In this document: positions 504-41,534 of the stretch, one piece after another
How the letters are laid out: each line of letters starts with the position of its first letter
How positions within the stretch are numbered: the stretch's first letter is position 1
IMG/VR virus record: IMGVR_UViG_3300036770_004723
Coordinates: 186,001 to 250,000 of that record
DNA length: 64,000 nt
Reading direction: 5' to 3' (one strand)
Translations under genes and position numbers: made by a program
The notes under the pieces: model-generated
Told to the model about the DNA's origin: nothing
Seen by the model: the letters and a program-made list of their open reading frames with translations, nothing else
Databases searched by the model: none

Positions 504-893
504 ATGAAAATGAAAATTAAGGTTAGATTAATCTCTACTTCGGCATCTAATAGTAAAACTCCAGAAATTAAATCAAAAATATCTGAATTGGCTTCTTTGC
601 TTTTTGAGTCAAAAAATAAAATAATTAAAGAACTTAAAGTAACCAAGCCTTTAGTTAAATCTGTTGAATCACTAGGTTACGCTGTTCGATTGGCGCGTAA
701 GTCTCACGTAGCGCAGAATAAATTAGATGATCTTGCTTCTTTGCTTGGTGTTAATCCAGCACATTTAACATCTGCTGTAGATAAAACAGGTTATTGTCTT
801 CATTTCAGTTCAGGTGCTGCAACTAAAGCCATAGCTTCTTTAAAAAGAATGGCTAAGGCAGAATCTGTGGAGAGTTCTTCTAAAAAAGCCTAA
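504..893 (+). CDS. Basic putative internal head protein with SxS leader
   Basis: N-terminus MKMKIKVRLISTSAS; Lys-rich. Confidence 0.6.
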   Translation: MKMKIKVRLISTSASNSKTPEIKSKISELASLLFESKNKIIKELKVTKPLVKSVESLGYAVRLARKSHVAQNKLDDLASLLGVNPAHLTSAVDKTGYCLHFSSGAATKAIASLKRMAKAESVESSSKKA

Positions 894-1114
894 TAGAGAG
901 TAACCTAAGAAAAGAATAAGATCTTTTAGATAAAGGACTTGAAATTGCGGCCAAATGAATTTGCTTTTGCTGATCGGGTAGAAACTTGTTGTTAAAAATT
1001 CTAAAACTCACGATGTAAAAAGCTTTAATTACTCCGGCAAAAACTATTACATATAACATCACAGAATCTGCGACTGCTCTCCCATTTAAACGACGTTAGT
1101 ATTAAGGAAGCACA

Positions 1115-1669
1115 ATGAAAATTTTCGTATCGCAATCAGCTGAAGTTACACAGCAAACTTTAAAACGTAAGATGAAAATCGGCGCTAAAGTACAATTACT
1201 TATGGTCGCTTCTCCTTCAGAAATAGGAACTTTAGGTCGAGGCAAAGCATCTGTAACAATAGCACATAATTATGTTGTTACAGATATTCAAACAACTAAA
1301 TCAGGTGACATTAAAAACTGTACACTTACAGTAAAAGGACCTAAGCCTTCACCGACATTAGGTTTAAAATCTGTTGAAGTACTAACCGCAACTACATTGG
1401 CTAAGTTGATGTCAACTAAACTTAATAAAGATTCAAAAGTTGGAACTAAATCTTTAAAGTTTGTCACGGTAAAATCTAAAGACACTGCTATGGGTAACGC
1501 TAAAGATTCCAAGTTAGCTCAACTTAAAGATAAAGTTAAAGAACTTGAATCTGCATATAAAAAGGCGATATCAGATTACCATAAAGCAGAAACTGCTGTT
1601 GATAAGGCAGATAATGCACTTGATAAAGCGAAACGTGCTTTAGATCTTTATATGAGTAAAACGCTGTAG
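1115..1669 (+). CDS. Basic putative internal head protein (SxS leader), paralog of 2033..2866
   Basis: SD AAGGA; MKIFVSQSAE; C-terminal coiled coil. Confidence 0.65.
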   Translation: MKIFVSQSAEVTQQTLKRKMKIGAKVQLLMVASPSEIGTLGRGKASVTIAHNYVVTDIQTTKSGDIKNCTLTVKGPKPSPTLGLKSVEVLTATTLAKLMSTKLNKDSKVGTKSLKFVTVKSKDTAMGNAKDSKLAQLKDKVKELESAYKKAISDYHKAETAVDKADNALDKAKRALDLYMSKTL

Positions 1670-2032
1670 GTGGTTTACTTCCCACTAAAGTTAAATTAAC
1701 TGACTCTATAAAGATCTCTGATCTTGATAAGGAATTCGAGTTTGTTGAGTTTAAAGCTTAATTGAAAACATGTGATTGCTGCAATTTAGATTCAGCAATT
1801 TTCTACATGTGACCATTTTATTTAAAAGAATTATCCACAAGGTAGGAGGTGATCCATATCTCGTGGTAACTACGCCACGTAAAAGATTGTAGTAGAGCAA
1901 TGGCTCGACTGCATAGCGCAGACAACTTCTTTCTATTAGAGGATTTGCCGTGAAAAACAATGTCAGTGGCGATGTAAGTAATTAAACGAGTGTGTGCGGT
2001 GTAAAAGCCGCACCTTTATAAAAGGGAAAACC
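1670..2032 (+). ncRNA. Candidate structured non-coding RNA or leader
   Basis: About 360-nt gap with hairpins ATTGCTG/CAGCAAT, CGTGG/CCACG, GTGCGG/CCGCAC, and AGGAGGTGATCC at 1844-1855. Confidence 0.3.
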
Positions 2033-2866
2033 ATGAAAGTCTTTATATCACATTCGGCAGAATTTTCTACTGCTATTAAAAAGAAATTGGTTGTAGGTAA
2101 TACTTTTATTCTTAATACCTTAATCCTAGAAAAACCTGAACCTAAGCGACCTTCAGTTGGATTTATTACTTCTGAAATTCGTGCAGAGTACGCTAAGAAA
2201 CCTGCGGTTGTTAAAATTGAAAAAACTGAATATTTTATTGCTGAAGTTGAAGAAACTAGAACAGGCACACTCAAAAGTATTACCGCTAACAGAGTCAGAG
2301 GTACAAAATCTTTTACTTCAATGCGTTCAGGTTATAATCCGCCTGCTGTTTTAAAGTTAAGTGCTGCCAAATTGGTTAAACTTCTTGATACCAGAATCAC
2401 AAAAACTGATTCAAAAGGTACGCAAAGCATTACACTTAAATCAGTGACAGGATCGAAATCTGAAAAACTTGCACCTTCTTCGGTTGACTCTAAAATAGCA
2501 AAACTTCGATCTCAAATTCAAGATCTGACAAATCAATTAAATGCCCTTGATAAAATTAAGAGTGCTGAACGGGCTAAGATCGAAGCAGAATCTAATAAAC
2601 GTGCTTTAGATAAATTGAAGGCCGACGGTTACACTTACATTCAAGAAATTGCAGGTAAACGTGTTAAGAAACGTACTTTAGTGGAAGCAAGAAACGTTAA
2701 TCCAGGTATAGGTAAATCTGCGGCTATTTATGCAGTTAAAGACGGTAAAGAGCAAAAAATACTAGTGTGGTCAGCAAAAGATCCGATAACAAAACGTATC
2801 TTTAAGGGCTATATGTGGTGGTTTACCACTAACACTGCTGAGAAAAAATTTAGCGCTGCTGTATAA
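2033..2866 (+). CDS. Basic putative internal head protein (SxS leader), paralog of 1115..1669
   Basis: Start moved to ATG 2033 after AAGGG; MKVFISHSAE. Confidence 0.65.
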   Translation: MKVFISHSAEFSTAIKKKLVVGNTFILNTLILEKPEPKRPSVGFITSEIRAEYAKKPAVVKIEKTEYFIAEVEETRTGTLKSITANRVRGTKSFTSMRSGYNPPAVLKLSAAKLVKLLDTRITKTDSKGTQSITLKSVTGSKSEKLAPSSVDSKIAKLRSQIQDLTNQLNALDKIKSAERAKIEAESNKRALDKLKADGYTYIQEIAGKRVKKRTLVEARNVNPGIGKSAAIYAVKDGKEQKILVWSAKDPITKRIFKGYMWWFTTNTAEKKFSAAV

Positions 2867-2880
2867 TTAATTTCCAGATT

Positions 2881-2917
2881 TGGGTGCTGTATAAAAGCTG
2901 TACCCATTTATTTTCTT
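2881..2917 (+). terminator. Possible intrinsic terminator
   Basis: TGGGT...ACCCA imperfect stem followed by a T-rich tract. Confidence 0.35.
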
Positions 2918-2932
2918 TATATAAGGGCACTT

Positions 2933-3277
2933 ATGAAGAAGCTTACCATTACATTAGTTTCTACATCAAAATCCGTTAATAGTATCCAACGTAATGGTAA
3001 GCATATTGAATATAATGGATTATTGTTTCCTGATTTTGATAAGCCTATTGAAATAAATGACAAACGATACAAACGTGCAGTGCTTGCACGTAAAGGCAAT
3101 GAATTCAAATTAATTCGTTATGGCCATGTTGATTACGAAGATTTTACTACACATAAAGATCCTGAACGTAGAGATCGTTTCAGGAAGAGGTTCCGTGGTA
3201 TATTAAAATCAGACGGTAAGCCAGCATACAAAGATAAGTGGCAAGCTGCTTATTGGGCGTATAACGATCTTTGGTAA
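2933..3277 (+). CDS. Small basic viral protein (DUF5754-like) with SxS leader
   Basis: KLIRYGHVDYEDFTTHKDPERRDRFRKRF...AAYWAYNDLW pattern; leader MKKLTITLVSTS. Confidence 0.55.
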   Translation: MKKLTITLVSTSKSVNSIQRNGKHIEYNGLLFPDFDKPIEINDKRYKRAVLARKGNEFKLIRYGHVDYEDFTTHKDPERRDRFRKRFRGILKSDGKPAYKDKWQAAYWAYNDLW

Positions 3278-3294
3278 ATGTTTAAGGAAAATCT

Positions 3295-3915
3295 ATGAAA
3301 ATCACACTGGTCTCAACAAGCAAATCTAGTTTAGTAAGTGAATCAGCTAAAAAACCTAGTCTTACAAGTTGGTTTGATAAACTTTCAAAAGAAGCTCAAG
3401 AAGAATATTTGGAAGAGCATCCAAATAGTATTTATGCTAAGCATTCACTGCGTAAGGCAAATCACAAAGCGCGTAAATCCCGTACAGGATCTATGGCGGA
3501 AAATTTAGATCCAAGATTTGCAGAAGCCTCTAAGGGTTTAGATCCTAACTTGCTAAAAGAAGTTTCGAAATTAGATGAAGATCTACAACAAGCTTTCACA
3601 GAACATTTTTCTGGCTATATAGATGAACTTATGCTGGATTTTGATAGTGAACAGACTGATGACGCTTTAAAGGGACGTAAAGCTCGCGCTATAAAAGCTA
3701 AAAAAGAAGCAGACTCTAGCACAGATCCTAGATCTAAAAAGAAAGCTACGCAAGAGTTTAAGAGAGCCTTTGCTGATTATAAAGAATTAAAACTAGCACA
3801 ACAAAAAGCACAGGATATTATGAAAACTCCTGGTAAGCTTGAAAAATTTAAAAATGAATTAGGTAGAAAACTTTTAAGTAAAATGAGCAAAGTACAAGCG
3901 AATACTAGCGTGTAA
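3295..3915 (+). CDS. Putative internal head protein (double SxS leader, HPxSxYAK module)
   Basis: MKITLVSTSKSSLVSESA; WFDKLSKEAQEEYLEEHPNSIYAK. Confidence 0.6.
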   Translation: MKITLVSTSKSSLVSESAKKPSLTSWFDKLSKEAQEEYLEEHPNSIYAKHSLRKANHKARKSRTGSMAENLDPRFAEASKGLDPNLLKEVSKLDEDLQQAFTEHFSGYIDELMLDFDSEQTDDALKGRKARAIKAKKEADSSTDPRSKKKATQEFKRAFADYKELKLAQQKAQDIMKTPGKLEKFKNELGRKLLSKMSKVQANTSV

Positions 3916-3954
3916 TGCTTGTGAAAAATAAAAATTTATTAGGAAACATCAAAA

Positions 3955-5313
3955 ATGATTATTAGTATATCATCAAGAACTTCAGGTAAAGAAGTAAAAC
4001 CAGTTAAGATTCCAAAGAGTATTGCTTTCGCTGCTGAAAAAACAAAGTCTCGTATTGTTAAAGCAGTACCAGGCCGTTATATTCTTAAAAATCGCAAAGG
4101 TATGTTTGTTGTAGTAAGATTCAAAGACGAAACACGTTATACCGCAAGTGTTGGTACAAAACTTTTTTCTGCATCAAGCACTGAATCTGATGTAGAAGAT
4201 TATTTTGTTGTTGAATCTGAATCTAATCAGCCTGGTGCTCGTAATTCAGCGGCAGGAAATAAGTTGGGTAAGAAAAATCATGCTAAAGGCATGTTGGCAG
4301 CTGGTTGGTGGTTATTTGTAAAACGTGCAGATGGTAAAATGCAAAAGGCATATATAGGTGGTCGTATTAGTGGCCGTCGCCTATTAGGTTTATTAGATCC
4401 TTCAACAGTTAAAACTGAAGAACCGAAGAAACCTATCAAACCAAAAGCAAAAGCAGGTAAATTTAAAGTTGTTAAATTGAACGGTAGAAATTTATACGAC
4501 CTGAAGATAAAAGGTAAGAGTGCTGCTACTCTCAGTGCAACTCAAAAAGTTTCAAACATCAAATCTATGAAAAAATTAGGTCTTGATGATAAAGAGATTC
4601 AAGAAATTTTATCTCAACTTAAAACGGAACCACCTAAAACAGTGAAAGATTCATTAAAAGAACGTAAAGAAGAATCGAAGAGGAATGCAGACTCGCCACT
4701 GAAACAGAGAGTTAGACAACTTAATAAAGAACAGATGGCGCGTGACAAAGCTAATGAGAATTTCAGCAACAAAAAAGCACCAGAATTAAAGAACTACGGT
4801 ACGGATATGCGTACATTAGTAGATGCCATAGTAGTAGCAAGCGCTTCAAAAGATCCAAAAACACTCACTAAATATGTGAAAGAAATTGCTGCGAAAGCGC
4901 ATGAAGCTTGGGCTGCCCAATTTAGAAAAGATAATCCTGATCAAAAATCCCGCGTTAAAGCTACGAAAGATGCTGATTGGATTAAAGCAAATGGATCAGA
5001 TAAAGTTGACATTTTAAATACTAAATTTGATGACTTACCTTCTGACTGGCAAGCTGAAAATTTAAAAGGGGGTACAGCGTCACTTGCTGCTTTCATGAAA
5101 GCAGGTAAAGTGATCTCAAAAGATCCAAAAGCAGATATTTCAATACCTTTGGAAAAAGCTTCTGATGAAGTACATAAGAAGTGGCTGGAACGTAATGGAG
5201 CATGGGCGCAAGAAGATCAAAAAGTTTCATACGCTAAACTAAGTGAAACTGAGAAACAAAAAGATCGAGACTTCATTGCCAATACTATTAAAGTATTGTC
5301 GAAATACCGTTAA
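3955..5313 (+). CDS. Modular putative head protein with C-terminal tandem RyR-like domain
   Basis: N-terminal ~150 aa paralogous to 5820..7451; AHEAW...DDLPSDWQ and VHKKWLERNG..W..VSYAKLSETEKQKDR repeats. Confidence 0.6.
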   Translation: MIISISSRTSGKEVKPVKIPKSIAFAAEKTKSRIVKAVPGRYILKNRKGMFVVVRFKDETRYTASVGTKLFSASSTESDVEDYFVVESESNQPGARNSAAGNKLGKKNHAKGMLAAGWWLFVKRADGKMQKAYIGGRISGRRLLGLLDPSTVKTEEPKKPIKPKAKAGKFKVVKLNGRNLYDLKIKGKSAATLSATQKVSNIKSMKKLGLDDKEIQEILSQLKTEPPKTVKDSLKERKEESKRNADSPLKQRVRQLNKEQMARDKANENFSNKKAPELKNYGTDMRTLVDAIVVASASKDPKTLTKYVKEIAAKAHEAWAAQFRKDNPDQKSRVKATKDADWIKANGSDKVDILNTKFDDLPSDWQAENLKGGTASLAAFMKAGKVISKDPKADISIPLEKASDEVHKKWLERNGAWAQEDQKVSYAKLSETEKQKDRDFIANTIKVLSKYR

Positions 5314-5331
5314 ATTTTATAGGATACTTTC

Positions 5332-5715
5332 ATGAAAATCAAACTGTTCATAAGTGAATCTAATTGGTTTTCGGATCTAACTGAGAAAGCAAAAAAGCTT
5401 TATATAAAGGAACACCCTGAGAGTAAATATGCAAAACAATTAAGTGAACCTTCAGCTGCTAAACAAAGTGTACGTAAGATGGAAGTATACTTTATTAAAG
5501 ATGTAGACAGATTTGTTCAAATTGTGCGTATTGATCCTAAACTACTTTTTAAACACTTCTTTATGAAGCCATCGCCTCCTTATGATATGGAGTTGCATGA
5601 AGTAGTTAATGGTGTCACAAAAGGTAAAACTTTAGATCTTCCTAGATCCGCTTTAGATGCTGCACACAAAGAAAATTTAATAGGCACACGAGTTATGCTT
5701 GTTGAATTTAAATAA
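5332..5715 (+). CDS. Putative internal head protein (SxS leader, HPxSxYAK module)
   Basis: MKIKLFISESNWFSDLTEKAKKLYIKEHPESKYAK. Confidence 0.6.
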   Translation: MKIKLFISESNWFSDLTEKAKKLYIKEHPESKYAKQLSEPSAAKQSVRKMEVYFIKDVDRFVQIVRIDPKLLFKHFFMKPSPPYDMELHEVVNGVTKGKTLDLPRSALDAAHKENLIGTRVMLVEFK

Positions 5716-10595: not shown

Positions 10596-11684
10596 ATGAG
10601 TAATTTAGTCAAAGGTAAAACTTTCAGTCTGCGTAACGGCGCACCGGTGACAGATCTGAAATTCAAAGGCAGCAACATGACTGCTCTTTCAAGTAACGGT
10701 GAAGTGAACGCAAATGACAATCGCGATCTGATGCACAAAATCGGCCAGCTGTTACAGTCTGTATCATCTGGTGAAATTGTTCAACAAAATGTAGGTGCAT
10801 TTGCTTCTTTATCAAATTCAGATAAAGTAAATTTGATCGCTGTTGCAAATTCTGATAAAGATAAATGGGCTGCTTTAGGTGCATCTATCGCACAAGAAGT
10901 ACGTGAACAGCAAACTCGTCAAGGTTTTTTACGCAGCATGACTGTTGTTGAAAACATGAAACAAGGCGAAGTAATGCGAGTTCCTATGCCTAAGCATGGC
11001 GGACGCGCTATTGTTGCAACTGGCCCAACTGCATTGCAGTATCAGTTAATTAATGATCGTTACTTTACACCTAGCCCGTTTGAATTAAAAGCTTCGGTAC
11101 GTGTAAGTAAGTTAGAAATGGTGCAGGCAACGCACGATTTATTAGACCATGCTTACAATGAAGCTGTTGAAGGTATGGTAACTGCCGGTGATCGTATTTG
11201 GAAAAGCGCTGCTGATCGTACTGTTGGTAAATCAAACAATTTGGTTGGTTTTAGCGGTGCTTTAACTCCGGCAGTTATTTCTCGTGCTGCTTCACGAATT
11301 CGTGAATGGAATCTTCCTGTATCTCGTGCAGTTATTGCTGCAAGTTTTTGGGAAGATATCCAATCTGAAAGTTCATGGGCAACTGCACTGACTCCAGTGT
11401 CACAGTACGAATTACTGTTAACTGGTAAGATTGCAACTATCTTCGGTCTGGATCTGATGACTGATGGTTTCCGTCCTGAAAACCAACGTGTGTTGACACG
11501 TAACGATGCTTATATTGTTGCTGATTCTGAATATCACGCTACTATGGGTTCGTTTGGTGGTATTGAAAGTACTCCAACTGATGGCTCCAACAACGGTGAA
11601 ACTACCAAAGGTTGGTTACTGTCTGAAGTAATGTCTTTCGTTATTCCTAACACACGTTCAGTTATCAAACTGCAACGTATCTAA
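10596..11684 (+). CDS. Major capsid protein
   Basis: 362 aa; position after scaffold and decoration genes; HK97-like features (GKIATIFGLDLMTD, GWLLSE near C-terminus); SD GGAG; followed by a terminator. Confidence 0.8.
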   Translation: MSNLVKGKTFSLRNGAPVTDLKFKGSNMTALSSNGEVNANDNRDLMHKIGQLLQSVSSGEIVQQNVGAFASLSNSDKVNLIAVANSDKDKWAALGASIAQEVREQQTRQGFLRSMTVVENMKQGEVMRVPMPKHGGRAIVATGPTALQYQLINDRYFTPSPFELKASVRVSKLEMVQATHDLLDHAYNEAVEGMVTAGDRIWKSAADRTVGKSNNLVGFSGALTPAVISRAASRIREWNLPVSRAVIAASFWEDIQSESSWATALTPVSQYELLLTGKIATIFGLDLMTDGFRPENQRVLTRNDAYIVADSEYHATMGSFGGIESTPTDGSNNGETTKGWLLSEVMSFVIPNTRSVIKLQRI

Positions 11685-29556: not shown

Positions 29557-30057
29557 ATGTCAGGAACATACTTAGCAGTAAAGCCTACAGCACTTTCACT
29601 CAATGACATTAAGAAAATTCAATTAGCCATTAATATTCAAGATCCTATCCCTAAAGAAGAAATTCATTGTACTCTCATGGCCAGCAAAGAAAAAACAGGT
29701 TCAGGTTATTCACCTAATCCAGATATTGTATATTCTGCTTCTGTAACAGGTTGTGATATTTTAGGTGAGAAAGGTTCAGGTTGGCAAGCCTTGATATTAA
29801 AGTTGCACTGTCCTGCATTACAAAGACGCTTTAATTTGGCGAAACACCGAGGCATGGAACACAGTTACCCTGAATTTCTGCCGCATGTAAGTTTAGCCTA
29901 TGAAAAAGATAATGATCTTGAAGGCTACTTGGTAGAGCTTCGAGAATATCTTCAAAAGTCTCCGCAGTTAACTATTGAATTAAGTTACGAGTATATGGAG
30001 CCATTTAACGATACTTGGATCGAAGACGAGATCAAAAAAGATGAATCGAAAGTCTGA
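29557..30057 (+). CDS. acb1: Anti-CBASS nuclease Acb1-like 2H phosphoesterase (T4 gp57B-like)
   Basis: Two HxT/S motifs (IHCTL, PHVSL); GTYLAVK N-terminus and EYMEP..W C-terminus match the gp57B layout. Confidence 0.8.
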   Translation: MSGTYLAVKPTALSLNDIKKIQLAINIQDPIPKEEIHCTLMASKEKTGSGYSPNPDIVYSASVTGCDILGEKGSGWQALILKLHCPALQRRFNLAKHRGMEHSYPEFLPHVSLAYEKDNDLEGYLVELREYLQKSPQLTIELSYEYMEPFNDTWIEDEIKKDESKV

Positions 30058-31062: not shown

Positions 31063-31611
31063 ATGAAAATCTTAATTAGCCTATCAAACGAAAAAATAAA
31101 TAAGAGTAGCGCAACGTTCGGTCCACTTACTGTAGTAGCGAATTTTGCTAACAAAAATATGTACAGTTGTACATGGGCAAATAAGATGAAAAATTCATCT
31201 ACTATATTGACCAAACTTGGATTTAAAAGCTATAGTGTCGTAGTAACTGGTCCAAATTTGCCTGAAAGTTCTCAAGCTTTTAAAGATTTAACTTCAGCTG
31301 CTTTAGGTTTCTTTAGTAATTGCAGTACAGTGCGTTTAGAAGACCTTAATATTGTTAATGGCAGGAAATGGGCAGCGGATTGGATCAAAAACGTAGAAAA
31401 TGTTTCTACGTTAAATGTACGTCTTGACATTAGAAGTAGAGAGCGCGACAATCTTCATATTCCTGTAACTGTAGGAACTGATGTTAAACGGCGCGGTGTA
31501 TTACTGTCTATTACTGAAATGAGTGCTAAATGCCGTGTAATGTTATTAAATGCGGATGGCAGCAATGGTAATGTTCTTGAATTGCCAAAAGATCAAATTT
31601 GGATTGAATAA
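31063..31611 (+). CDS. Putative head protein with SxS leader
   Basis: MKILISLSNE. Confidence 0.6.
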   Translation: MKILISLSNEKINKSSATFGPLTVVANFANKNMYSCTWANKMKNSSTILTKLGFKSYSVVVTGPNLPESSQAFKDLTSAALGFFSNCSTVRLEDLNIVNGRKWAADWIKNVENVSTLNVRLDIRSRERDNLHIPVTVGTDVKRRGVLLSITEMSAKCRVMLLNADGSNGNVLELPKDQIWIE

Positions 31612-34432: not shown

Positions 34433-34452
34433 GTGGGGAATTAATTCCCCAC
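34433..34452. terminator. Perfect 20-bp palindrome (hairpin)
   Basis: GTGGGGAATTAATTCCCCAC. Confidence 0.55.
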
Positions 34453-34475: not shown

Positions 34476-35255
34476 ATGCCTGAGTCTTCTTTATTGCATA
34501 TACTATACACAAAAATAGAAAATAAAACTTTAACTTTACCTACTTTGCCTGATGTTGCTGTTAAAGTAATGTCTATTATTGACGCACCTGAAATAAATTC
34601 TAGCGATCTGTGTCGTGCTATAAGTAGAGACAGTGGCATATCCATTAGACTGATAAAGCTTGCCAATTCCGCACATTTCGGCCGCAGCATTAAGATAACT
34701 ACACTACAGCAAGCTGTAGTTCGTTTAGGTTTCAGGCAAGTAAGATCTCTGGTGATTGCTATGGCTATGGAGCAATTATTTATAAGTACAGACTCTGTTA
34801 TACATAACAAATTGCAAAGTATATGGCATGATTCAATTAGAATTACTTCTACAGCAATGGCCTATGATTTTATAATGCACAGAGGTAAATACAGCGATAC
34901 TCTTATGCTGTTAGGTACTACATGCAGACTTGGTATGCTTACTGTACTAACTGAAATCGAAAAAACATTTAGCGCCGATATATTCCCAAAGGTTGATTAT
35001 ACAAATTTAACTATTATTGAAAAACCTATACTTCTATCTCTATTTAAGCATTGGGAATTTCCTCAAGAACTAATTAATATACTAGTTAGTTATTTTGACC
35101 GTGCTGCTGTTTGTCCGCAATCTTGTGGTTTAATTTATGCAGATAAATTTGGAGATAAAAAATTTGAAGAATGTTCTGAGTTGGTTGAATTAGATAAAGA
35201 TATATTTGATAAGATATCAGAACTAGCTAAACAATTTAATAGTATTTTGAGGTAA
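34476..35255 (+). CDS. HDOD-domain protein (host-like)
   Basis: LPTLPDVA; D..ISIRLIKLANSAHF; LQQAVVRLG; HWEFPQEL. Confidence 0.88.
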   Translation: MPESSLLHILYTKIENKTLTLPTLPDVAVKVMSIIDAPEINSSDLCRAISRDSGISIRLIKLANSAHFGRSIKITTLQQAVVRLGFRQVRSLVIAMAMEQLFISTDSVIHNKLQSIWHDSIRITSTAMAYDFIMHRGKYSDTLMLLGTTCRLGMLTVLTEIEKTFSADIFPKVDYTNLTIIEKPILLSLFKHWEFPQELINILVSYFDRAAVCPQSCGLIYADKFGDKKFEECSELVELDKDIFDKISELAKQFNSILR

Positions 35256-35257
35256 CT

Positions 35258-36928
35258 ATGAAAAGCAATTTACTGTCTATTTCCGCAGTATCAAAACAAT
35301 CCACATTAGCATTTATTAAAATTATTTCCGCTGCTTCTGTTGCATTTATGGAAAATTCGCCTTTATCTTCTTCTATTAAGTCTGATTTAAGATCGTGGAA
35401 TGCTGATGCTTCTGAATTCATCAAAAGATTTAATTTAGATAAAAAAGCTTTCTCCCGTATCATATCACAGCTGCAACTCGATAAAGTTAATCTTGTTGAT
35501 GAAATAGGTGACGTAATGGTAGGTGTGCGTGAAGCACATAGATCAAAAGAACTTATCAAAGAACTAGATCTGAGTAAGCTTCATTTGGATTTTTTAAAAT
35601 GCTTGATAAGTGTTACTTTAGGCGGCAGTGAAACAGCTGTTAAGAACTTATATAAGAATATAAGTAAGTTAGGTGATCCGAAGTTAAGTGCTTTATTTAT
35701 GCAGGAAACTGAATTAGATCAAAGTGATTTAGTTGCAGAACTCTCAAGATTTTGTAAAAATGTTTTCAAAAAGCCCGAACAAGATCTTAATGTAGAAGAT
35801 AAGAATAAGTTAAAGGCTAAAAATCCTGAACTCTATAAAGAATATTTAAAATTGTTACGTGATATTAATGAAGTAACCAAACAAGCTGTTAGTCAATTTG
35901 TACGTAACTCTGGCCAGCAATTAGTAAAAGCCACGGAACTCGTTAGATATTTGAAGACTAATAAAATCCGATCTAAAGTACCTGAAGGCTTTAATGGCTG
36001 GATAGATGAAACAGGTGCTTATTACAACACAAATAAAGTAAAGCTAGAAGGTGCCATTACAGGCAGATTGGAAGCAAATCCAAAATATGATCCTACAACA
36101 GATGATACATACGTATTCTTGCATTATCCACTATTTGGATCAGGGCAGCCTCAACGTATCTACACTGTTAATTACAGAAAAGGTAAAGTGAGTAAAAAAT
36201 TTAATGCTGTAGGTGCATTAATTAAAGATTTACCTGCGGCACGTAAAAAATGGTTACATGAGTTAAAAACTGGAAAACACAATGAAGCAGATACTGTTGC
36301 AGCCTTAATTCTTGAATTGATTTATGAAACTTCTGCACGTATCGGAACAGCAGGACAAAGCGGTCAAGGTATTAGTACACTATTAGTCAAAAACTACACA
36401 GGTAGAGGCCAAGGTTATTTTACACTTAATTATTTAGGTAAGAGTGGTGTAAAACAGAATCATAAAATTCTGACTAATCGCATTGAAACCAAACTTTTAA
36501 AAGAACTGTTAGAATCATTGACTACAGGTAAAAAACCTAATGATTTGATCATGACTGTGAATAAAGGAAGAACCGAAAAACACATTAACGGTACTTACGT
36601 TAATAAATACCTTAGATCTTTAGGTGTTGATCCAAGTGTTACCCTTCACAAATTCCGCCATGCCCGAGGATCTATTGTTGCTCAAGCTCAATTAGATAAG
36701 GCTCCGTCATTCAAAAATGCTTCGGAAGCAGAAGTAAATAAATGGTTTATTGAAGCAATGAAGAAAGTCGGATCTGAGTTAGGTCATGTTAGCGGCGATA
36801 AAGTCACTGCCACTACTGCAATCCAAAACTATATTGATCCGCAGTTAATTAAAGATTGGTTTGATAAAGTTGGTGTAAGACCAGGCAGTGTTATTCAAAA
36901 TGCACTTAATAAGGCAGGTAAGGATTAA
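35258..36928 (+). CDS. DNA topoisomerase IB with long N-terminal extension
   Basis: Catalytic pentad SARIG (R), YLGKSG (K), HKFR (R), LGH (H), NYIDP (Y). Confidence 0.8.
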   Translation: MKSNLLSISAVSKQSTLAFIKIISAASVAFMENSPLSSSIKSDLRSWNADASEFIKRFNLDKKAFSRIISQLQLDKVNLVDEIGDVMVGVREAHRSKELIKELDLSKLHLDFLKCLISVTLGGSETAVKNLYKNISKLGDPKLSALFMQETELDQSDLVAELSRFCKNVFKKPEQDLNVEDKNKLKAKNPELYKEYLKLLRDINEVTKQAVSQFVRNSGQQLVKATELVRYLKTNKIRSKVPEGFNGWIDETGAYYNTNKVKLEGAITGRLEANPKYDPTTDDTYVFLHYPLFGSGQPQRIYTVNYRKGKVSKKFNAVGALIKDLPAARKKWLHELKTGKHNEADTVAALILELIYETSARIGTAGQSGQGISTLLVKNYTGRGQGYFTLNYLGKSGVKQNHKILTNRIETKLLKELLESLTTGKKPNDLIMTVNKGRTEKHINGTYVNKYLRSLGVDPSVTLHKFRHARGSIVAQAQLDKAPSFKNASEAEVNKWFIEAMKKVGSELGHVSGDKVTATTAIQNYIDPQLIKDWFDKVGVRPGSVIQNALNKAGKD

Positions 36929-36948: not shown

Positions 36949-37215
36949 ATGAAACTAACCTCTATTTCTTTTACAAAAAAATCCACTATTTCCTTAGATG
37001 CTAAAACATTAATGACGGAAATTGATCGCGCACTAGCACGAGTTGATAAGAATATAGCCGTAGAAAGAAGAAAAATGCAGATATTGAAATCAAAATCGGA
37101 AGTGAGCGATTCAGCTAATTTATCTTTGCATGAATTGCTTGGTAACAAACAAGTTCTTTTAAGTGTTAAACTGGCCATTGAGAAAAATGATTTTAAAGAT
37201 TTAAAATCTATATAA
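36949..37215 (+). CDS. Small coiled-coil protein with SxS leader
   Basis: MKLTSISF. Confidence 0.55.
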   Translation: MKLTSISFTKKSTISLDAKTLMTEIDRALARVDKNIAVERRKMQILKSKSEVSDSANLSLHELLGNKQVLLSVKLAIEKNDFKDLKSI

Positions 37216-38424: not shown

Positions 38425-38772
38425 ATGAAAATCTTTGTTTCTACATCAAATAATGCACATGAACAAGCTGGTAAAAATGTCAAAGTAGCTGTTGCATTTG
38501 CTTATAACAAAACAAATAATAAAGAATTGGATATAGTAGTTAATTTACGTAATGAACTCACTATCTACGTTCAGTTTCTTACAACAAACAAAAACATTCA
38601 GAGCAATCTTACTAATTACGTTCTTAAGAAAACAGTCGCTGATGAACTTAATGAAAAATTTGGTTCTGATTTTGATGAAGGCTTTATATCAAGTGGCGGT
38701 CCTGAAGGTGTGTCTGTTCAATACACAGCACGTACAACCTTAGGAAAGTTATTGAATAAGCAAGGACAATAG
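38425..38772 (+). CDS. Putative internal head protein with SxS leader
   Basis: MKIFVSTSNN. Confidence 0.6.
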   Translation: MKIFVSTSNNAHEQAGKNVKVAVAFAYNKTNNKELDIVVNLRNELTIYVQFLTTNKNIQSNLTNYVLKKTVADELNEKFGSDFDEGFISSGGPEGVSVQYTARTTLGKLLNKQGQ

Positions 38773-38775
38773 GTT

Positions 38776-39144
38776 ATGTATATTTGGATGTCTGCTATCT
38801 TAGCTTCTTTGTGTGTGCAAATACCGAATGTATTAGCTATATCAAAATACGGTAACGGTATAATATTAAAAGAGGCAATTACATTATCTTTATTGTGCCT
38901 ACCCTTTACTTTCGTAGCCTGTATATGCTACATGTATTTTTATTCGAATATCGCATTGAAGATCAGCTACCCTTCAGCTATTTTAATTCTGTACGCACTG
39001 AATTTATTGATAGCTACTTTAGTGCAAGGCTTTATACTAAAAACAAAATCTATGTATTTGGTGGATTACATATCAGTCAGTTTGATTTTAGTGGGATTAG
39101 TTTTAACAGTATTAAGAGAGCAGATTAAAGGATACTTTTCATGA
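38776..39144 (+). CDS. Four-helix membrane protein (SMR/DMT-like topology)
   Basis: Four hydrophobic segments in 122 aa. Confidence 0.55.
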   Translation: MYIWMSAILASLCVQIPNVLAISKYGNGIILKEAITLSLLCLPFTFVACICYMYFYSNIALKISYPSAILILYALNLLIATLVQGFILKTKSMYLVDYISVSLILVGLVLTVLREQIKGYFS

Positions 39145-40925
39145 AACGTATTAGAGTAAATTTGGAGAGTATAAGTGCTTTAAAGCCTTCTCAGTATAGA
39201 CAATTTGTACGTGGTTGGAAGCCAAGTCAAGATTTTTTAACCATATTTAGAAGAGAATCCAAAGGCAAGTCTCCATTTCGTGTACTAATAAGCCCAGAGC
39301 AAAACGCCATTAACTTAAAATCTATTATACCTAAAGAACTAATGGAATACTTGTTAAAAAATAACTATAATATGGACCTTATAGGTTACGTGACGGGCTA
39401 TGTAAATGATAAATATGGACGAAAACAAAAGTTAGGTAAAGTAATAGCGGATCATCCGAATCTTTTAAATCCCTTTAACTCCGACGAAAGCCGCAAAAAA
39501 GATTTGATGGAATTAAATAAAGAAAGTTTTGTCGTTGCCATAAGTCACCACCCCTATGACATAGCAGGTATGAGTACAGATCGCGGATGGACAAGTTGCA
39601 CTAATCTATTAGGTGAGTATGAAAAATCTGCACCTATGAAAGTACAACCTGAAATAGATAACAAAAGTATAATAGCCTATTTAGTACGTAGATCAGATAT
39701 TAATATAAATAAGCCTGTGGCCAGAGCTATAGCTAAAAAATTTGTAAGTGATGCAGGTTCCGAGAAATATGTAATTGACGCTGTTTATCCTGATAGAAAC
39801 CCTTCTCTTATAAATACTTTCCAAAAATGGCTAGATAAAAACATAAATTCAGGTCTGAAAAAAGTCCCGAATGATTTTTCAATGTACACTTTGCCTTTCG
39901 GTATGTATTCTGACGGATTTTCTGACACCGAAATTGTTAACGGGTTTTCTGAAACAGCTGACGAAGAACAACTATTAAATTTGTTTCAGGGCATAGAATA
40001 CTTACCTTCATACTCTAATATGTCAGCTTTTGTATCCGCCCATTACAATAATAAAAAAGCTTTGTCCAAGATAAAGAATGATGATATGTATAGGTCTCAA
40101 TTAATAACGTATTGTCTGAGATTTTTAGACTTATTTGACACAAACAAGCTTAACAAATTCATAGTAAATTTGTTAACAGATATGTACGATAATCGCTATC
40201 CATTTGAGGCCGCTGTATTAATAGCTAAATATTTACCTAGACGCAAAATTACAATACTGTCTCTAGATGAATCAAATAAATTACTTGATAATATGTTTAA
40301 AAGTCGAGAAGCCAAAGATTCTATTAACTACGCAAAGCTGCATGGTGGATCTGCCATTAACCTATTTAAAATAGGACTTTTGGCCTTTTTATCTTATGAA
40401 ACGAAGCCTTTGAATTGTTTTTCACGGTTATATGCAAACTGCCTTAACCCAGAAGATATTTTGACGCCAATGTTAGATAAAAGTTTTGAAATAACAAAAG
40501 AGTACGGAAGATTTTTAGCTGCGGCTATAATGGCACAATCTCCTTACGTAGATAAGAAAAAACTATATATTAAACTGTTTCAAGATCCTAAAATAAACTT
40601 TAACTGGGCCGATGAATATTCAGTTGTTTTGTTACATAGATCACAGCCTAAAGAAAGCAAGCTAGGTGTAGAACTTACTATCATGACAAATTTATTGAAT
40701 GACGTGAATGTTAATGTATTAAATGTATACACGGATGTTTTGATAAAATGTATAAAAGAACTTGAGTCGCTTCTTTCGGATAAAACTACAAACGTATTTA
40801 AGTACAATCAAAGGTATCTTCAAAATAATCTTAATAGGTTAGAGGTGCTTGGTGATATTGAAGGTTTGGCCTTTCTTAATCTTGTTATCAATCAATGCCC
40901 TAAGGTTGACTATTGGCTAAACTGA
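39141..40925 (+). CDS. Large putative virion protein with SxS leader
   Basis: MKRIRVNLESISA; conserved-looking ISHHPYDIAGMSTDRGWTSC core. Confidence 0.6.
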   Translation: MKRIRVNLESISALKPSQYRQFVRGWKPSQDFLTIFRRESKGKSPFRVLISPEQNAINLKSIIPKELMEYLLKNNYNMDLIGYVTGYVNDKYGRKQKLGKVIADHPNLLNPFNSDESRKKDLMELNKESFVVAISHHPYDIAGMSTDRGWTSCTNLLGEYEKSAPMKVQPEIDNKSIIAYLVRRSDININKPVARAIAKKFVSDAGSEKYVIDAVYPDRNPSLINTFQKWLDKNINSGLKKVPNDFSMYTLPFGMYSDGFSDTEIVNGFSETADEEQLLNLFQGIEYLPSYSNMSAFVSAHYNNKKALSKIKNDDMYRSQLITYCLRFLDLFDTNKLNKFIVNLLTDMYDNRYPFEAAVLIAKYLPRRKITILSLDESNKLLDNMFKSREAKDSINYAKLHGGSAINLFKIGLLAFLSYETKPLNCFSRLYANCLNPEDILTPMLDKSFEITKEYGRFLAAAIMAQSPYVDKKKLYIKLFQDPKINFNWADEYSVVLLHRSQPKESKLGVELTIMTNLLNDVNVNVLNVYTDVLIKCIKELESLLSDKTTNVFKYNQRYLQNNLNRLEVLGDIEGLAFLNLVINQCPKVDYWLN

Positions 40926-40941: not shown

Positions 40942-41457
40942 ATGCGAATATTTATATCACTTAGCTCAAGTATTTACTTTCGAGGTTTGACAGAAAAATT
41001 CTCTAAAGCATATCAAGACAAATCTCATATTATTTGGGTAACACCTGACAAAAGCTACGCACAGAACTACACAGAGGCCGAAGGAAGTTTGTTGACATAC
41101 GATCTTAAACTAGGCACTGCGTTTAACTTTGGATTTAGATCGTTAGATACTAGCGTTAAAATACAAGAAGTTTTGTCCCGCGTACAGCGTGGTATATTGT
41201 CTGCTTTCAGAGAAAAGATTATTGATCGTGATTTAGCAATGAAGCTAAATGATGAAGTAATAGATCTAATTGAGAAACATGAGAAAAGTAATAAATATAT
41301 GAAGGTATGGGAATGGTACTCTAAGGAGAAGAACATTTCTAGCATTTTGTTACGTGCTAAATTTACTCACATAGATGCAATGGAAGGTATTGATAACAAT
41401 ATAAAAACTATTGGCATTCTTGATAGAAACATTATTAAGAAAATACAGATGATATAA
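40942..41457 (+). CDS. ADP-ribosyltransferase-like protein with SxS leader
   Basis: YFRG strand, IWVTPDKSYAQNY, late acidic residue, ILDRNIIK end; ART-fold pattern. Confidence 0.5.
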   Translation: MRIFISLSSSIYFRGLTEKFSKAYQDKSHIIWVTPDKSYAQNYTEAEGSLLTYDLKLGTAFNFGFRSLDTSVKIQEVLSRVQRGILSAFREKIIDRDLAMKLNDEVIDLIEKHEKSNKYMKVWEWYSKEKNISSILLRAKFTHIDAMEGIDNNIKTIGILDRNIIKKIQMI

Positions 41458-41460
41458 TAG

Positions 41461-41487
41461 AAAAAGCCGCTTAAATTGCGGCTTTTT
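41461..41487. terminator. Bidirectional terminator at the convergence of the two arms
   Basis: AAAAAGCCGC-TTAAATT-GCGGCTTTTT. Confidence 0.85.
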
Positions 41488-41534
41488 CTATTATACAACT
41501 GAGTAAACTATACTGTAACTTCTTTTAATGAACC

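What the first reader, a model, noticed from the sequence alone, without database searches (positions are those of the whole stretch)
35258..36928. Topoisomerase IB bearing the head leader: a possibly virion-packaged topoisomerase
It has a complete R-K-R-H-Y catalytic set of poxvirus/bacterial-type Topo IB, an N-terminal extension of about 300 aa, a location among late genes rather than replication genes, and the N-terminus MKSNLLSISA. Poxvirus Topo IB is known to be encapsidated to support early transcription. A phage parallel would be notable.
Basis: partly seen in the sequence, partly recalled or inferred. Interest (0 to 1): 0.7.

Follow-up and report, generated by a model that had tools for sequence, protein, structure and literature searches.

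The report
Jumbo-phage topoisomerase IB, likely virion cargo
This gene encodes an intact type IB DNA topoisomerase of a family already known in PaBG/Lu11/phiRSL1-like jumbo phages, and its N-terminus weakly resembles a short tag shared by about 20 other proteins of the phage that may mark proteins for packaging into the virion, an idea with circumstantial support only.

Summary
The ORF (window 35258-36928, +, 556 aa) is real and encodes an intact Topo IB. R361, R467, H510 and Y525 are invariant and K395 is at least 90% conserved in 115 homologues. The model (pLDDT 95) matches human, variola and Deinococcus Topo IB at Z 20-24, recombinases at Z 13 or less, and protelomerases at about 7. The N-terminal extension is about 240 aa, not 300. 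It is all-alpha, has no fold match, and follows a flexible 12-residue tail. The gene lies in the late/structural block of a 286.6-kb jumbo phage. A type IIA topoisomerase sits elsewhere in the genome.

The family (PHROG 23460) is already annotated in PaBG, Lu11 and phiRSL1 and noted in the literature. A topoisomerase was reported in phiRSL1 virions.

The shared N-terminal leader MK[IV]x[IV]SxS is real: about 18-19 proteins per genome, almost never internal, and about 9 of them encoded between the prohead protease and capsid genes. This phage's topoisomerase matches it only weakly (p about 0.04-0.09). Its closest relative, and about 10% of the family, carry significant leaders.

Virion packaging is plausible (about 50%) but unproven. 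The enzyme itself is a new member of a known kind. The leader system is the more interesting lead.

The parts
35258..36928 (+). Long-form type IB topoisomerase gene (556 aa plus stop)
   Evidence: ORF. Pfam PF01028 at 1.6e-17 and PHROG 23460 at 2.9e-121, full length. AlphaFold model pLDDT 95.4. Topo IB structures match at Z 20-23.6.
35258..35293 (+). Residues 1-12, MKSNLLSISAVS: flexible N-terminal tail, a degenerate leader-like motif (hh-SISA)
   Evidence: The first ten residues average pLDDT 56, and residues 1-12 have no secondary structure ahead of helix 13-32. Leader HMM score 0.7-1.7 bits, p about 0.04-0.09. The closest relative P0002 scores 9.1 bits.
35294..35977 (+). Residues 13-240: family-specific all-alpha N-terminal extension of unknown function
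   Evidence: Helices 13-234 at pLDDT above 90. Best structural matches only Z about 5 or TM below 0.4. Conserved along the full length of the family.
35978..36181 (+). Residues 241-308: small beta-rich domain equivalent to the N-terminal domain of poxvirus Topo IB
   Evidence: Variola topoisomerase residues 5-292 align to model residues 241-543, Z 20.0. Strands at 248-301.
36182..36925 (+). Residues 309-556: Topo IB catalytic domain
   Evidence: Pfam 310-526. Deinococcus TopIB 3m4a aligns to 309-556, Z 20.5. Profile against PDB entry 2f4q gives E 4.3e-18.
36338..36340 (+). Arg361 codon (first catalytic Arg)
   Evidence: Invariant in 115 sequences. Coordinates verified.
36440..36442 (+). Lys395 codon (general-acid Lys)
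   Evidence: At least 90% conserved in 115 sequences and invariant in 18.
36647..36658 (+). His464-Lys-Phe-Arg467: second catalytic Arg preceded by a recombinase-like His (HxxR), where cellular Topo IB has Lys
   Evidence: R467 invariant and H464 at least 90% conserved. The three best solved Topo IBs show AKDFR or AKVFR at this position (alignments).
36785..36787 (+). His510 codon
   Evidence: Invariant in 115 sequences.
36830..36832 (+). Tyr525 codon (nucleophile)
   Evidence: Invariant in 115 sequences.
34476..35255 (+). HDOD-domain gene, 2 nt upstream of the topoisomerase gene; the pairing is conserved only in the close relative G001
   Evidence: Pfam HDOD at 4.3e-30. G001 orthologue 43% identical and adjacent to its topoisomerase. 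No counterpart in PaBG or Lu11.
34433..34452 (.). Perfect 20-bp palindrome GTGGGGAATTAATTCCCCAC between the 935-aa gene and the HDOD-topoisomerase pair; possible terminator or operator
   Evidence: Unique in the genome.
31063..31611 (+). Canonical leader protein (MKILISLSNE...), 182 aa
   Evidence: Leader HMM 20.4 bits. The G001 orthologue keeps the leader.
36949..37215 (+). 88-aa protein with the sub-threshold leader variant MKLTSISF
   Evidence: The probable G001 counterpart MKKKQLLLSES scores 13.8 bits.
38425..38772 (+). Canonical leader protein (MKIFVSTSNN...), 115 aa
   Evidence: Leader HMM 19.1 bits.
39141..40925 (+). 594-aa protein with the leader variant MKRIRVNLESISAL; orthologues carry canonical leaders
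   Evidence: Homologous from residue 1-4 to Lu11 gp207/208 (MRIQLAVAAV, MKIQLATAAV). Also homologous to Dickeya JA13 gp176 (MKTVVSISAL).
40942..41457 (+). Canonical leader protein (MRIFISLSSS...), 171 aa
   Evidence: Leader HMM 17.5 bits. G001 orthologue MKILISLSGE.
504..5715 (+). Array of seven consecutive leader-bearing genes (504, 1115, 2033, 2933, 3295, 3955, 5332), lying between the prohead protease (just upstream of the window) and the capsid gene
   Evidence: Protease phrog_18299 at genome 184059-184853. The gene at window 2933 hits phrog_220, minor head protein/DNA pilot, at 1.8e-14.
10596..11684 (+). Major capsid protein gene (context)
   Evidence: phrog_2522 at 2.3e-75.
41452..41496 (.). 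Strong bidirectional terminator ending the + strand late block
   Evidence: 19-bp stem followed by a T run. Strand switch visible.

Best explanation
The gene encodes a catalytically competent, phage-specific long-form type IB topoisomerase. It should relax supercoils without ATP or Mg, through a covalent 3'-phosphotyrosyl intermediate at Tyr525.

Its architecture is: a flexible 12-residue N-terminal tail; a family-specific helical domain of about 225 aa; then a complete poxvirus/bacterial-type two-domain Topo IB.

It is made late, together with structural proteins. It is not the replication topoisomerase, because the phage has a separate type IIA enzyme.

The most likely role (inferred, about 50%) is as virion cargo. 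Under this reading, the N-terminal tail is a weakened copy of a short amphipathic leader (M-K-h-x-h-S-x-S; Ala replaces Ser in GC-rich relatives). About 18-19 proteins of this phage carry that leader, and it would direct proteins into the assembling head. The enzyme would then enter the next host cell with the DNA and manage the topology of the incoming 287-kb genome before phage genes are expressed. That would parallel the encapsidated poxvirus Topo IB and T4 proteins that carry a capsid-targeting sequence.

Shown here: identity, fold, intact active site, domain map, late-block location, the existence and N-terminal specificity of the leader family, and the enrichment of leaders in the Topo IB family.

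Inferred only: that the leader means head packaging, that this particular tail still functions as a leader, and what the enzyme does after injection.
For: Enzyme:
- Pfam and PHROG matches.
- The pentad is conserved in 115 homologues.
- Profile hit to Deinococcus TopIB at E 4.3e-18.
- Model pLDDT 95.4.
- Structural Z scores: 23.6 human, 20.5 Deinococcus, 20.0 variola; 13.3 XerH; 6.9 TelK.

A separate type IIA topoisomerase is present in this genome and in all four relatives checked.

Leader family:
- 10 strict matches score at least 18.8 bits, against a maximum of 12.3 at 1,402 internal Met sites.
- About 45-50 N-termini in G000 plus G001 score above 9 bits, against 1 of 2,803 decoys.
- The Ser codons come from both codon families, so selection acts on the peptide.

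Link to the head:
- About 9 leader genes lie between the prohead protease and the MCP.
- One leader protein hits phrog_220, 'minor head protein and DNA pilot'.
- PaBG gp83 has a leader-like start, is adjacent to the PaBG topoisomerase gene, and is an abundant virion protein.
- A 49%-identical homologue of the leader-bearing P-loop protein is annotated 'phage structural protein' in phiR1-37.

Link between topoisomerase and leader:
- 14 of 134 family N-termini score at least 5 bits, against 3 of 1,394 decoys. Seven score at least 7 bits, against none.
- The closest relative (79% identical) scores 9.1 bits.
- In Lu11 the topoisomerase sits among the main run of leader genes, directly after gp196 and before gp198-209, and starts ...HIAVAAA, like its neighbours' ...QLAVAAV.
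- Other sub-threshold G000 leaders have orthologues with canonical leaders.

[quoted passage not shown] From my own memory, not verified by any tool, that abstract names a topoisomerase IB found by N-terminal sequencing.

Fusions: some family members fuse the Topo IB to a Tad6 anti-Thoeris domain, or to a weakly matching SprT-like region. This fits proteins that act at the onset of infection.
Against: - This phage's topoisomerase N-terminus is not a significant leader by objective scoring: strict PSSM -0.6 bits, rank 69 of 382; HMM 0.7-1.7 bits, p about 0.04-0.09.
- The loose regular expression that included it was written after seeing it.
- The Ser-to-Ala difference in leader 'dialect' between phages tracks genomic GC: 35-38% for Ser-type against 51-58% for Ala-type. 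Co-variation is therefore weak evidence for a shared receptor.
- Leader proteins also occur outside the head module, at genome 11-13 kb and 58.5 kb on the other strand.
- The PaBG virion proteome of 14 Coomassie-stained bands does not list its topoisomerase gp84, although such a survey sees only abundant proteins.
- phiRSL1 also encodes a type II topoisomerase, so the accessible secondary citation does not say which enzyme was in the virion.
- No virion proteome, transcript data or cleavage-site data exist for this uncultivated phage.
- In PaBG, Lu11 and phiRSL1 the gene neighbours nucleotide-metabolism genes such as thymidylate kinase and NAD salvage. That would also fit an intracellular role.
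Confidence: 0.5

Rival explanations
1. The enzyme is an intracellular late-phase topoisomerase and is not packaged. It would relieve torsional stress during late transcription, recombination-dependent replication, or processing and packaging of concatemers of a very large genome. Its N-terminal 'SxSAV' would simply be the family's own N-terminal cap ahead of the first helix, and the resemblance to the leader would be coincidental.
For: - The topoisomerase N-terminus is not significant against the leader profile.
- Residues 5-30 align across the whole family as part of the conserved N-terminal domain.
- In PaBG, Lu11 and phiRSL1 the gene sits beside thymidylate kinase or NAD- and nucleotide-metabolism genes.
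- An NAD-dependent DNA ligase is also embedded in the late/head region of these phages without any leader. DNA enzymes in late blocks therefore need not be virion cargo.
- PaBG gp84 is absent from the published virion band list.
Against: - The Topo IB family's N-termini are about 50-fold enriched for significant leaders compared with internal decoys.
- The closest relative has a significant leader.
- A topoisomerase was reported in phiRSL1 virions.
- The gene is embedded among leader genes in G000, G001 and Lu11.
- A separate type IIA topoisomerase already serves the replication module.
Confidence: 0.35
2. The shared leader is real but is not a head-packaging signal. It could instead mark proteins for another phage-specific process, for example recognition by a phage chaperone or protease, incorporation into the tail or baseplate, or control of stability. 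The topoisomerase would then be a client of that other process.
For: - Leader proteins are found in several genome regions, including a five-gene cluster at genome 11.2-13.4 kb and a P-loop enzyme at 58.5 kb on the opposite strand.
- Some lie among tail or baseplate genes, at window 15865 and 28318.
- No processing site could be defined. An E often follows the leader, but not always.
Against: - The densest leader array lies exactly between the prohead protease and the MCP.
- One leader protein matches a minor head protein/DNA pilot family.
- PaBG gp83 and phiR1-37 g133 are virion proteins.
- T4 shows that identical short N-terminal peptides on unrelated proteins can be capsid-targeting sequences. 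This is established knowledge, not tested here.
Confidence: 0.1
3. The protein acts as a site-specific recombinase or telomere resolvase rather than as a relaxing topoisomerase.
For: - The family keeps a recombinase-like His in an HxxR motif (H464-K-F-R467), where cellular and poxviral Topo IB have Lys.
- There is a weak Pfam Phage_integrase hit, 20 bits, below the 27.1 cut-off.
Against: - Fold scores: Z 20-23.6 to Topo IB, including the poxvirus N-terminal domain, against at most 13.3 for Xer/Cre/Int and 6.5-6.9 for TelK/TelA.
- Topoisom_I scores far above its Pfam cut-off.
- Relatives are circularly permuted (PaBG; PMC7412058) or have direct terminal repeats (G001), not hairpin ends.
- No second arm-binding or dimerisation domain typical of resolvases was found.
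Confidence: 0.05

Closest known systems
Jumbo-phage long-form Topo IB (PHROG 23460): PaBG gp84, Lu11 gp197, phiRSL1 ORF108, and homologues in phage NCTB, Motura, HRDY3 and the Xanthomonas PhiXhv phages
   Same: Full-length homology at 28-34% identity over 80-100% of the protein. Same length (about 555-565 aa), same N-terminal helical extension and same pentad. Already annotated as topoisomerase I/IB. Iyer et al. [quoted passage not shown]
   Different: This copy comes from an AT-rich (35% GC) uncultivated phage. It lies 25 kb downstream of the capsid gene, in a sub-cluster of leader genes, and is translationally coupled to an HDOD gene. In the cultured relatives it sits beside thymidylate kinase or NAD-metabolism genes.
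Poxvirus (vaccinia/variola) topoisomerase IB
   Same: Two-domain Topo IB fold: variola residues 5-292 align to residues 241-543, Z 20. Same R-K-R-H-Y chemistry. The poxvirus enzyme is encapsidated; that is established knowledge, not tested here.
   Different: Only 11-12% sequence identity. This protein has an extra leader plus helical domain of about 240 aa, and His rather than Lys three residues before the second Arg. Packaging is not demonstrated here. The genome shows no over- or under-representation of the poxvirus target (C/T)CCTT.
Bacterial Topo IB (Deinococcus radiodurans, PDB 2f4q and 3m4a)
   Same: Best sequence-profile match among solved structures, E 4.3e-18. Z 20.5 over residues 309-556.
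   Different: The bacterial enzymes are about 330-350 aa and lack the N-terminal helical domain and the leader.
T4 capsid-targeting sequence on internal proteins IPI-III and Alt
   Same: A near-identical peptide of about 8-10 residues at the extreme N-terminus of otherwise unrelated proteins, including enzymes, many of them encoded next to head-morphogenesis genes. This is a resemblance in logic, recalled from the literature.
   Different: No sequence similarity (MKTYQEFIAE against MKIxISxS). The phage lineage differs. Cleavage by the prohead protease and head localisation are untested here.
Polyvalent or co-injected phage proteins (Iyer et al. 2017 concept) and Tad6 anti-Thoeris proteins
   Same: Some family members fuse the Topo IB to a Tad6 domain (3.4e-35), to a SprT-like region (a weak match, below Pfam's cut-off) or to DUF5661. 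Leader proteins carry KMPT-N and DUF5754 / minor-head-protein modules.
   Different: The window's topoisomerase is a stand-alone protein. The Tad6-like segment is in a separate 935-aa protein two genes upstream and scores below Pfam's cut-off, 25.1 against 27 bits.

Membership tests
Type IB DNA topoisomerase (poxvirus/bacterial type) | Catalytic pentad Arg-Lys-Arg-His-Tyr in the canonical order and motifs | tested here: met
   R361, K395, R467, H510 and Y525. Four are invariant and K395 is at least 90% conserved in 115 homologues. They align to the corresponding motifs of 2f4q and 6z01.
Type IB DNA topoisomerase (poxvirus/bacterial type) | Topo IB catalytic-domain fold, closer to topoisomerases than to tyrosine recombinases | tested here: met
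   Z 20-23.6 to human, archaeal, Leishmania, Deinococcus and variola Topo IB, against at most 13.3 for recombinases. Foldseek E from 7e-11 to 2e-6 for Topo IB, against 1e-3 or weaker for XerH.
Type IB DNA topoisomerase (poxvirus/bacterial type) | Small N-terminal beta domain preceding the catalytic domain, forming the DNA clamp | tested here: met
   Variola residues 5-292 align to residues 241-543. Strands at 248-301.
Type IB DNA topoisomerase (poxvirus/bacterial type) | Score above the curated Pfam threshold for Topoisom_I | tested here: met
   64.1 bits against a cut-off of 23.7.
Type IB DNA topoisomerase (poxvirus/bacterial type) | ATP- and Mg-independent relaxation through a 3'-phosphotyrosyl intermediate | not testable with these tools
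   Needs biochemistry.
PHROG 23460 / jumbo-phage long-form Topo IB | Full-length match including the N-terminal helical extension | tested here: met
   E 2.9e-121, residues 4-555 against profile positions 4-563 of 565. 433 clusters at 50% identity have E of 1e-30 or better, and most of the best 150 are full-length, about 530-600 aa.
Leader-bearing ('MK-h-x-h-S-x-S') protein set of this phage | N-terminus scores above decoys with a leader profile trained without the topoisomerases | tested here: not met
   0.7-1.7 bits in rounds 2-4 and not reported in round 1. Between 104 and 246 of 2,803 decoys score at least as high. Strict PSSM -0.6 bits, rank 69 of 382.
Leader-bearing ('MK-h-x-h-S-x-S') protein set of this phage | Orthologues in related phages carry a significant leader | tested here: met
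   P0002 (79% identical) scores 9.1 bits. 14 of 134 family N-termini score at least 5 bits, against 3 of 1,394 decoys. The Lu11 topoisomerase scores 3.6 bits with Lu11's own PSSM, p about 0.013.
Leader-bearing ('MK-h-x-h-S-x-S') protein set of this phage | The motif lies on an exposed, unstructured extreme N-terminus | tested here: met
   Residues 1-12 are coil with low pLDDT, ahead of helix 13-32.
Virion-packaged (encapsidated) enzymes | Protein detected in purified virions | not testable with these tools
   The phage is uncultivated. The only indirect evidence is the topoisomerase reported in phiRSL1 virions (PMC7247149). The PaBG 14-band proteome lacks gp84.
Tyrosine recombinase / protelomerase | Fold and domain organisation closer to recombinases or resolvases than to Topo IB | tested here: not met
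   Z at most 13.3 (Xer) and 6.5-6.9 (TelK/TelA), against 20-23.6 for Topo IB. Pfam Phage_integrase scores 20 bits, below the 27.1 cut-off.

The most novel reading that the evidence does not exclude
PaBG/Lu11-like jumbo phages would use a short, lineage-specific N-terminal cargo-loading peptide: an amphipathic beta-strand, M-K-h-x-h-[S/A]-x-[S/A]. The peptide would load about 20 otherwise unrelated proteins into the head for co-injection. The cargo would include enzymes such as the Topo IB and a P-loop protein, and probably anti-defence factors. This would be a capsid-targeting system unrelated in sequence to T4's and similar in logic to encapsulin cargo peptides. The Topo IB would be one of its conserved clients and would prepare the topology of the incoming genome.
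Probability: 0.35. Interest if true: 0.75.

Novelty: new member of a known kind. Interest (0 to 1): 0.45.

Why it matters
The enzyme itself is a further member of an already annotated jumbo-phage Topo IB family. Its possible presence in virions has a 2010 precedent in phiRSL1.

What would matter is the link to the leader. If the short N-terminal tag really is a head-loading signal, three things follow:
- It defines the injected proteome of a whole clade of jumbo phages from sequence alone.
- It explains why DNA enzymes sit in late operons.
- It offers a portable tag for loading foreign proteins into large phage heads.

A packaged Topo IB would also extend the poxvirus strategy of carrying a topoisomerase in the particle to bacterial viruses. 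It would raise the question of what topological problem a 250-300-kb genome faces on entry.

Tried and rejected
- Single-sequence structure prediction gave a useless model, pLDDT 40. It was replaced by a 115-sequence alignment.
- A single-sequence search of the PDB found nothing. A profile was needed.
I rebuilt it from session proteins only.
- A home-made ZOOPS EM motif search degenerated: lambda rose to 0.8 and the motif went diffuse. I discarded it.
- Matching PaBG virion bands to ORFs by molecular weight was unreliable. I read the annotation instead.
- The canonical poxvirus target (C/T)CCTT is neither enriched nor depleted in any of the five genomes, ratios 0.81-1.12.
- The HDOD neighbour is not conserved beyond the close relative, so I did not pursue it as a partner.
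- No MCP processing motif shared with the leaders could be defined.
- Pfam found no family for the prohead protease, and the PF03420 genome search was uninformative because its controls did not ring.
- The N-terminal 240 aa gave no credible atlas or fold match.
- CCCATTTA, a candidate head-gene promoter element, is absent upstream of the topoisomerase operon.
- The primary phiRSL1 and Lu11 papers are not held.
- No deep virion proteome was found for any relative.
- I did not run complex prediction. The leader's receptor is unknown, deep alignments for the candidates were not available, and a negative result would not have been informative.
- I did not use read laying or sequencing runs. The phage is an uncultivated metagenomic record, and expression data would not settle packaging.
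Full report
**The sequence.** Window 35258-36928 (+) is an uninterrupted 556-codon ORF starting MKSNLLSISA. It has a GAGG ribosome-binding site. Its start lies 2 nt after the stop of an upstream HDOD-domain gene. The window is part of a 286,584-bp IMG/VR jumbo-phage record that CheckV rates 100% complete, and it corresponds to genome coordinates 186001-250000. GC content is about 35%.

**Identity of the protein.**
- Pfam gives Topoisom_I (PF01028) at E=1.6e-17 over residues 310-526. Phage_integrase scores only a sub-threshold 20 bits.
- PHROG 23460 matches end to end at 2.9e-121.
- tblastn finds full-length homologues at 28-34% identity in Pseudomonas phages PaBG, Lu11 and HRDY3, phage NCTB, Ralstonia phiRSL1, Achromobacter Motura, Xanthomonas and Erwinia jumbo phages and others. 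Most are annotated topoisomerase I or IB.
- Iyer et al. 2021 already describe this as a phage-specific topoisomerase I of subgroup 2.2 jumbo phages (PMC7824862).
- An exhaustive profile search finds 433 clusters at 50% identity with E of 1e-30 or better. Most of the best 150 are full-length, about 530-600 aa.

**Active site and fold.**
- In an alignment of 115 diverse members, R361, R467, H510 and Y525 are invariant and K395 is at least 90% conserved (coordinates checked).
- A family profile hits Deinococcus TopIB (2f4q, 4.3e-18) and an archaeal Topo IB.
- With the 115-sequence alignment, AlphaFold2 gives mean pLDDT 95.4 and pTM 0.89.
- VIA-align gives Z 23.6 to human Topo I (residues 255-556), 20.5 to Deinococcus (309-556) and 20.0 to variola topoisomerase, whose residues 5-292 cover residues 241-543.
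- Tyrosine recombinases reach at most Z 13.3 and protelomerases 6.5-6.9. Foldseek agrees.
Residues 1-12 form a low-confidence coil and residues 13-235 are all helical, with no credible structural or atlas match.
- One family-specific detail stands out. The second catalytic Arg sits in H464-K-F-R467, a recombinase-like HxxR motif, where the three best-matching solved Topo IBs have AK(D/V)FR.

**Genomic setting.**
- The + strand from window 1 to about 41,500 is the late/structural block. It holds the virion protein at 9862, MCP at 10596, sheath at 12978, tube at 14906, tape measure at 19248 and baseplate-like genes. It ends at a strong bidirectional terminator at 41452-41496.
- The phage also has a type IIA topoisomerase at genome ~85 kb, as do PaBG, Lu11, phiRSL1 and the relative G001. 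The Topo IB is therefore not the only topoisomerase and is not in the replication module.
- A unique perfect 20-bp palindrome (34433-34452) separates the upstream 935-aa gene from the HDOD-topoisomerase pair.
- The 935-aa/HDOD/topoisomerase synteny holds in a relative whose topoisomerase is 67% identical. HDOD has no counterpart in PaBG or Lu11.

**The leader is real.**
- Many ORFs begin M-K-[IV]-x-[IV]-S-x-S. Ten strict matches score at least 18.8 bits, against a maximum of 12.3 over 1,402 internal Met positions.
- The serines use both codon families, so the conservation is at the peptide level.
- An iterated profile HMM, trained without the topoisomerases, finds about 45-50 N-termini in G000 plus G001 above 9 bits. 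Only 1 of 2,803 internal-Met decoys does so, and that one looks like a mis-called true start. This amounts to about 18-19 proteins in this genome.
- About 9 of them form an array between the head maturation protease (phrog_18299, genome 184059-184853) and the MCP. That is where scaffold, core and internal head proteins are usually encoded.
- One leader protein hits phrog_220, 'minor head protein and DNA pilot' (1.8e-14), and DUF5754.
- Related phages have their own versions: MKILVSLSA in G001, MKIQLAVA in at least 10 Lu11 genes, and a looser form in PaBG.
- Orthologues keep the leader in the local version. Window 39141 (MKRIRVNLESISAL) corresponds to Lu11 gp207/208 (MRIQLAVAAV, MKIQLATAAV) and to Dickeya JA13 gp176 (MKTVVSISAL). 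A P-loop protein has MKISISSKS here, MKILVSLNK in G001 and MKINVPLSS in PaBG.
- A caveat applies. Ser-type leaders occur in genomes of 35-38% GC and Ala-type in genomes of 51-58% GC. This 'co-variation' may therefore be largely compositional.

**Does the topoisomerase carry the leader?** Objectively, only weakly in this phage.
- A strict PSSM gives -0.6 bits, rank 69 of 382, with about 9% of null windows doing as well.
- The HMM gives 0.7-1.7 bits, p about 0.04-0.09.
- The G001 orthologue (MIISISAVSK) is borderline at p 0.007-0.03. The Lu11 orthologue (MNVHIAVAAAS) scores 3.6 bits with Lu11's own PSSM, p about 0.013. Cross-dialect scores are -4 to -6.
- My earlier loose regular expression (13 hits against 0.3 expected) was designed after seeing the sequence and should be discounted.
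- At family level the link is strong. The same non-topoisomerase-trained HMM finds leaders at 14 of 134 family N-termini at 5 bits or more, against 3 of 1,394 decoys, and 7 of 134 at 7 bits or more, against none. These include the closest relative P0002 (79% identical, MSNLNLLISESAVSK, 9.1 bits) and near-canonical cases such as MARIKIFVSQSAD.
- Other sub-threshold G000 variants (window 3955, 36949, 39141) likewise have orthologues with canonical leaders.
- In Lu11 the topoisomerase gene sits among the main run of leader genes, directly after gp196 and before gp198-209. In PaBG it abuts gp83, gp82, gp81 and the MCP. Here it lies in a sub-cluster where about half the genes carry leaders or leader variants.
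- I conclude that the family is a genuine client of the leader system and that this copy carries a decayed version. I put the probability that it is still functional at about 0.6.

**Is the leader a virion or head signal, and is the enzyme packaged?** Support:
- the protease-to-MCP position of the main array;
- the minor-head-protein hit;
- PaBG gp83 (MLIKINLLEAVAAK), an abundant virion protein encoded next to the topoisomerase (PMC7412058 Table 1);
- phiR1-37 g133, 49% identical to the leader-bearing P-loop protein and annotated 'phage structural protein';
- the statement in PMC7247149 that a DNA topoisomerase was identified in the phiRSL1 virion proteome, citing Yamada et al. 2010.

From memory, that abstract specifies a topoisomerase IB identified by N-terminal sequencing. 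I could not verify this because the paper is not held, and phiRSL1 also encodes a type II enzyme.

Some family members fuse the Topo IB to a Tad6 domain (3.4e-35). Tad6 is reported to bind and block the Thoeris ThsB protein (PMC13728456). Other members are fused to a weakly matching SprT-like region or to DUF5661. This fits proteins that act at the very start of infection.

Against packaging: the PaBG band list lacks gp84, leader genes also occur outside the head module, and no direct data exist for this phage.

**Verdict.**
The extension is about 240 aa rather than 300, and the 'leader' is weak in this copy.
Virion packaging is plausible, at about 50%. It is neither demonstrated nor new in principle, given the phiRSL1 report.
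- The recombinase/resolvase alternative is unlikely on fold grounds.
- The topoisomerase itself is a new member of a known kind. The genome-wide N-terminal leader is the more novel lead and deserves its own follow-up.

Noticed in passing
window 504-5715, 31063, 38425, 40942; genome 11224-13393 (-), 58551-59000 (-), 175801, 185805: A family of about 18-19 proteins per genome shares an N-terminus-specific leader, MK[IV]x[IV]SxS. Related jumbo phages have their own versions (MKILVSLSA in G001, MKIQLAVA in Lu11). About 9 of these genes lie between the prohead protease and the capsid gene. No description of it turned up in the papers I could read, though I ran no literature search aimed at the motif itself.
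   Followed up: yes
window 31621-34428: This 935-aa protein, two genes upstream of the topoisomerase, has a Tad6-like (Thoeris inhibitor) segment at residues 68-121, scoring 25.1 bits, just under Pfam's cut-off. Its G001 orthologue contains an internal domain related to the KMPT-N-like protein at window 15865. Some Topo IB family members are fused directly to Tad6.
   Followed up: partly
window 34476-35255: A phage-encoded HDOD-domain protein (4.3e-30) is translationally coupled to the topoisomerase gene. The pairing is conserved in the close relative G001 but not in PaBG or Lu11. Its function in a phage is unknown.
   Followed up: partly
window 482-489, 1081-1088, 2903-2910, 10434-10441: The octamer CCCATTTA occurs 8 times in the window, against about 2 expected. 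It lies 22-34 nt upstream of three leader-array genes and 162 nt upstream of the capsid gene. It may be a promoter element for head genes. It is absent from the topoisomerase operon.
   Followed up: partly
genome 177490-179460 (L072:9490-11457): An NAD-dependent DNA ligase gene sits in the late block a few genes from the prohead protease. The same ligase-to-protease neighbourhood recurs in G001, PaBG and Lu11.
   Followed up: partly
genome 58551-59000 (-) (L073:8554-9000): A small P-loop protein (phrog_4182) carries the leader in G000, G001 and PaBG. Its phiR1-37 homologue g133 has no leader but is annotated as a phage structural protein.
   Followed up: partly
window 29557-30057: A 166-aa protein matches the RNA ligase family phrog_755 (2.1e-27), inside the late structural block.
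   Followed up: no
window 3295-3915 and 5332-5715; genome 181920-183515: A recurring motif W[FW]xxLxxExxxxYLxxHPxSxY follows directly after the leader in several proteins. It also opens one Topo IB family member (P0113, MDKNWWSKLTKEEQDKYLKEHKKS). Its function is unknown.
   Followed up: no
window 1994-2866: The longest ORF starts at a GTG at 1994, but the leader (MKVFISHSAE) and a good ribosome-binding site point to the ATG at 2033 as the true start.
   Followed up: partly
window 10596-11684: The capsid protein has a conserved N-terminal element, h-x-A-L-S-S-x-G-E-h-N-A (residues about 28-40), shared with G001, Lu11 and PaBG. It faintly resembles the leader followed by Glu and may mark a maturation cleavage site.
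   Followed up: partly
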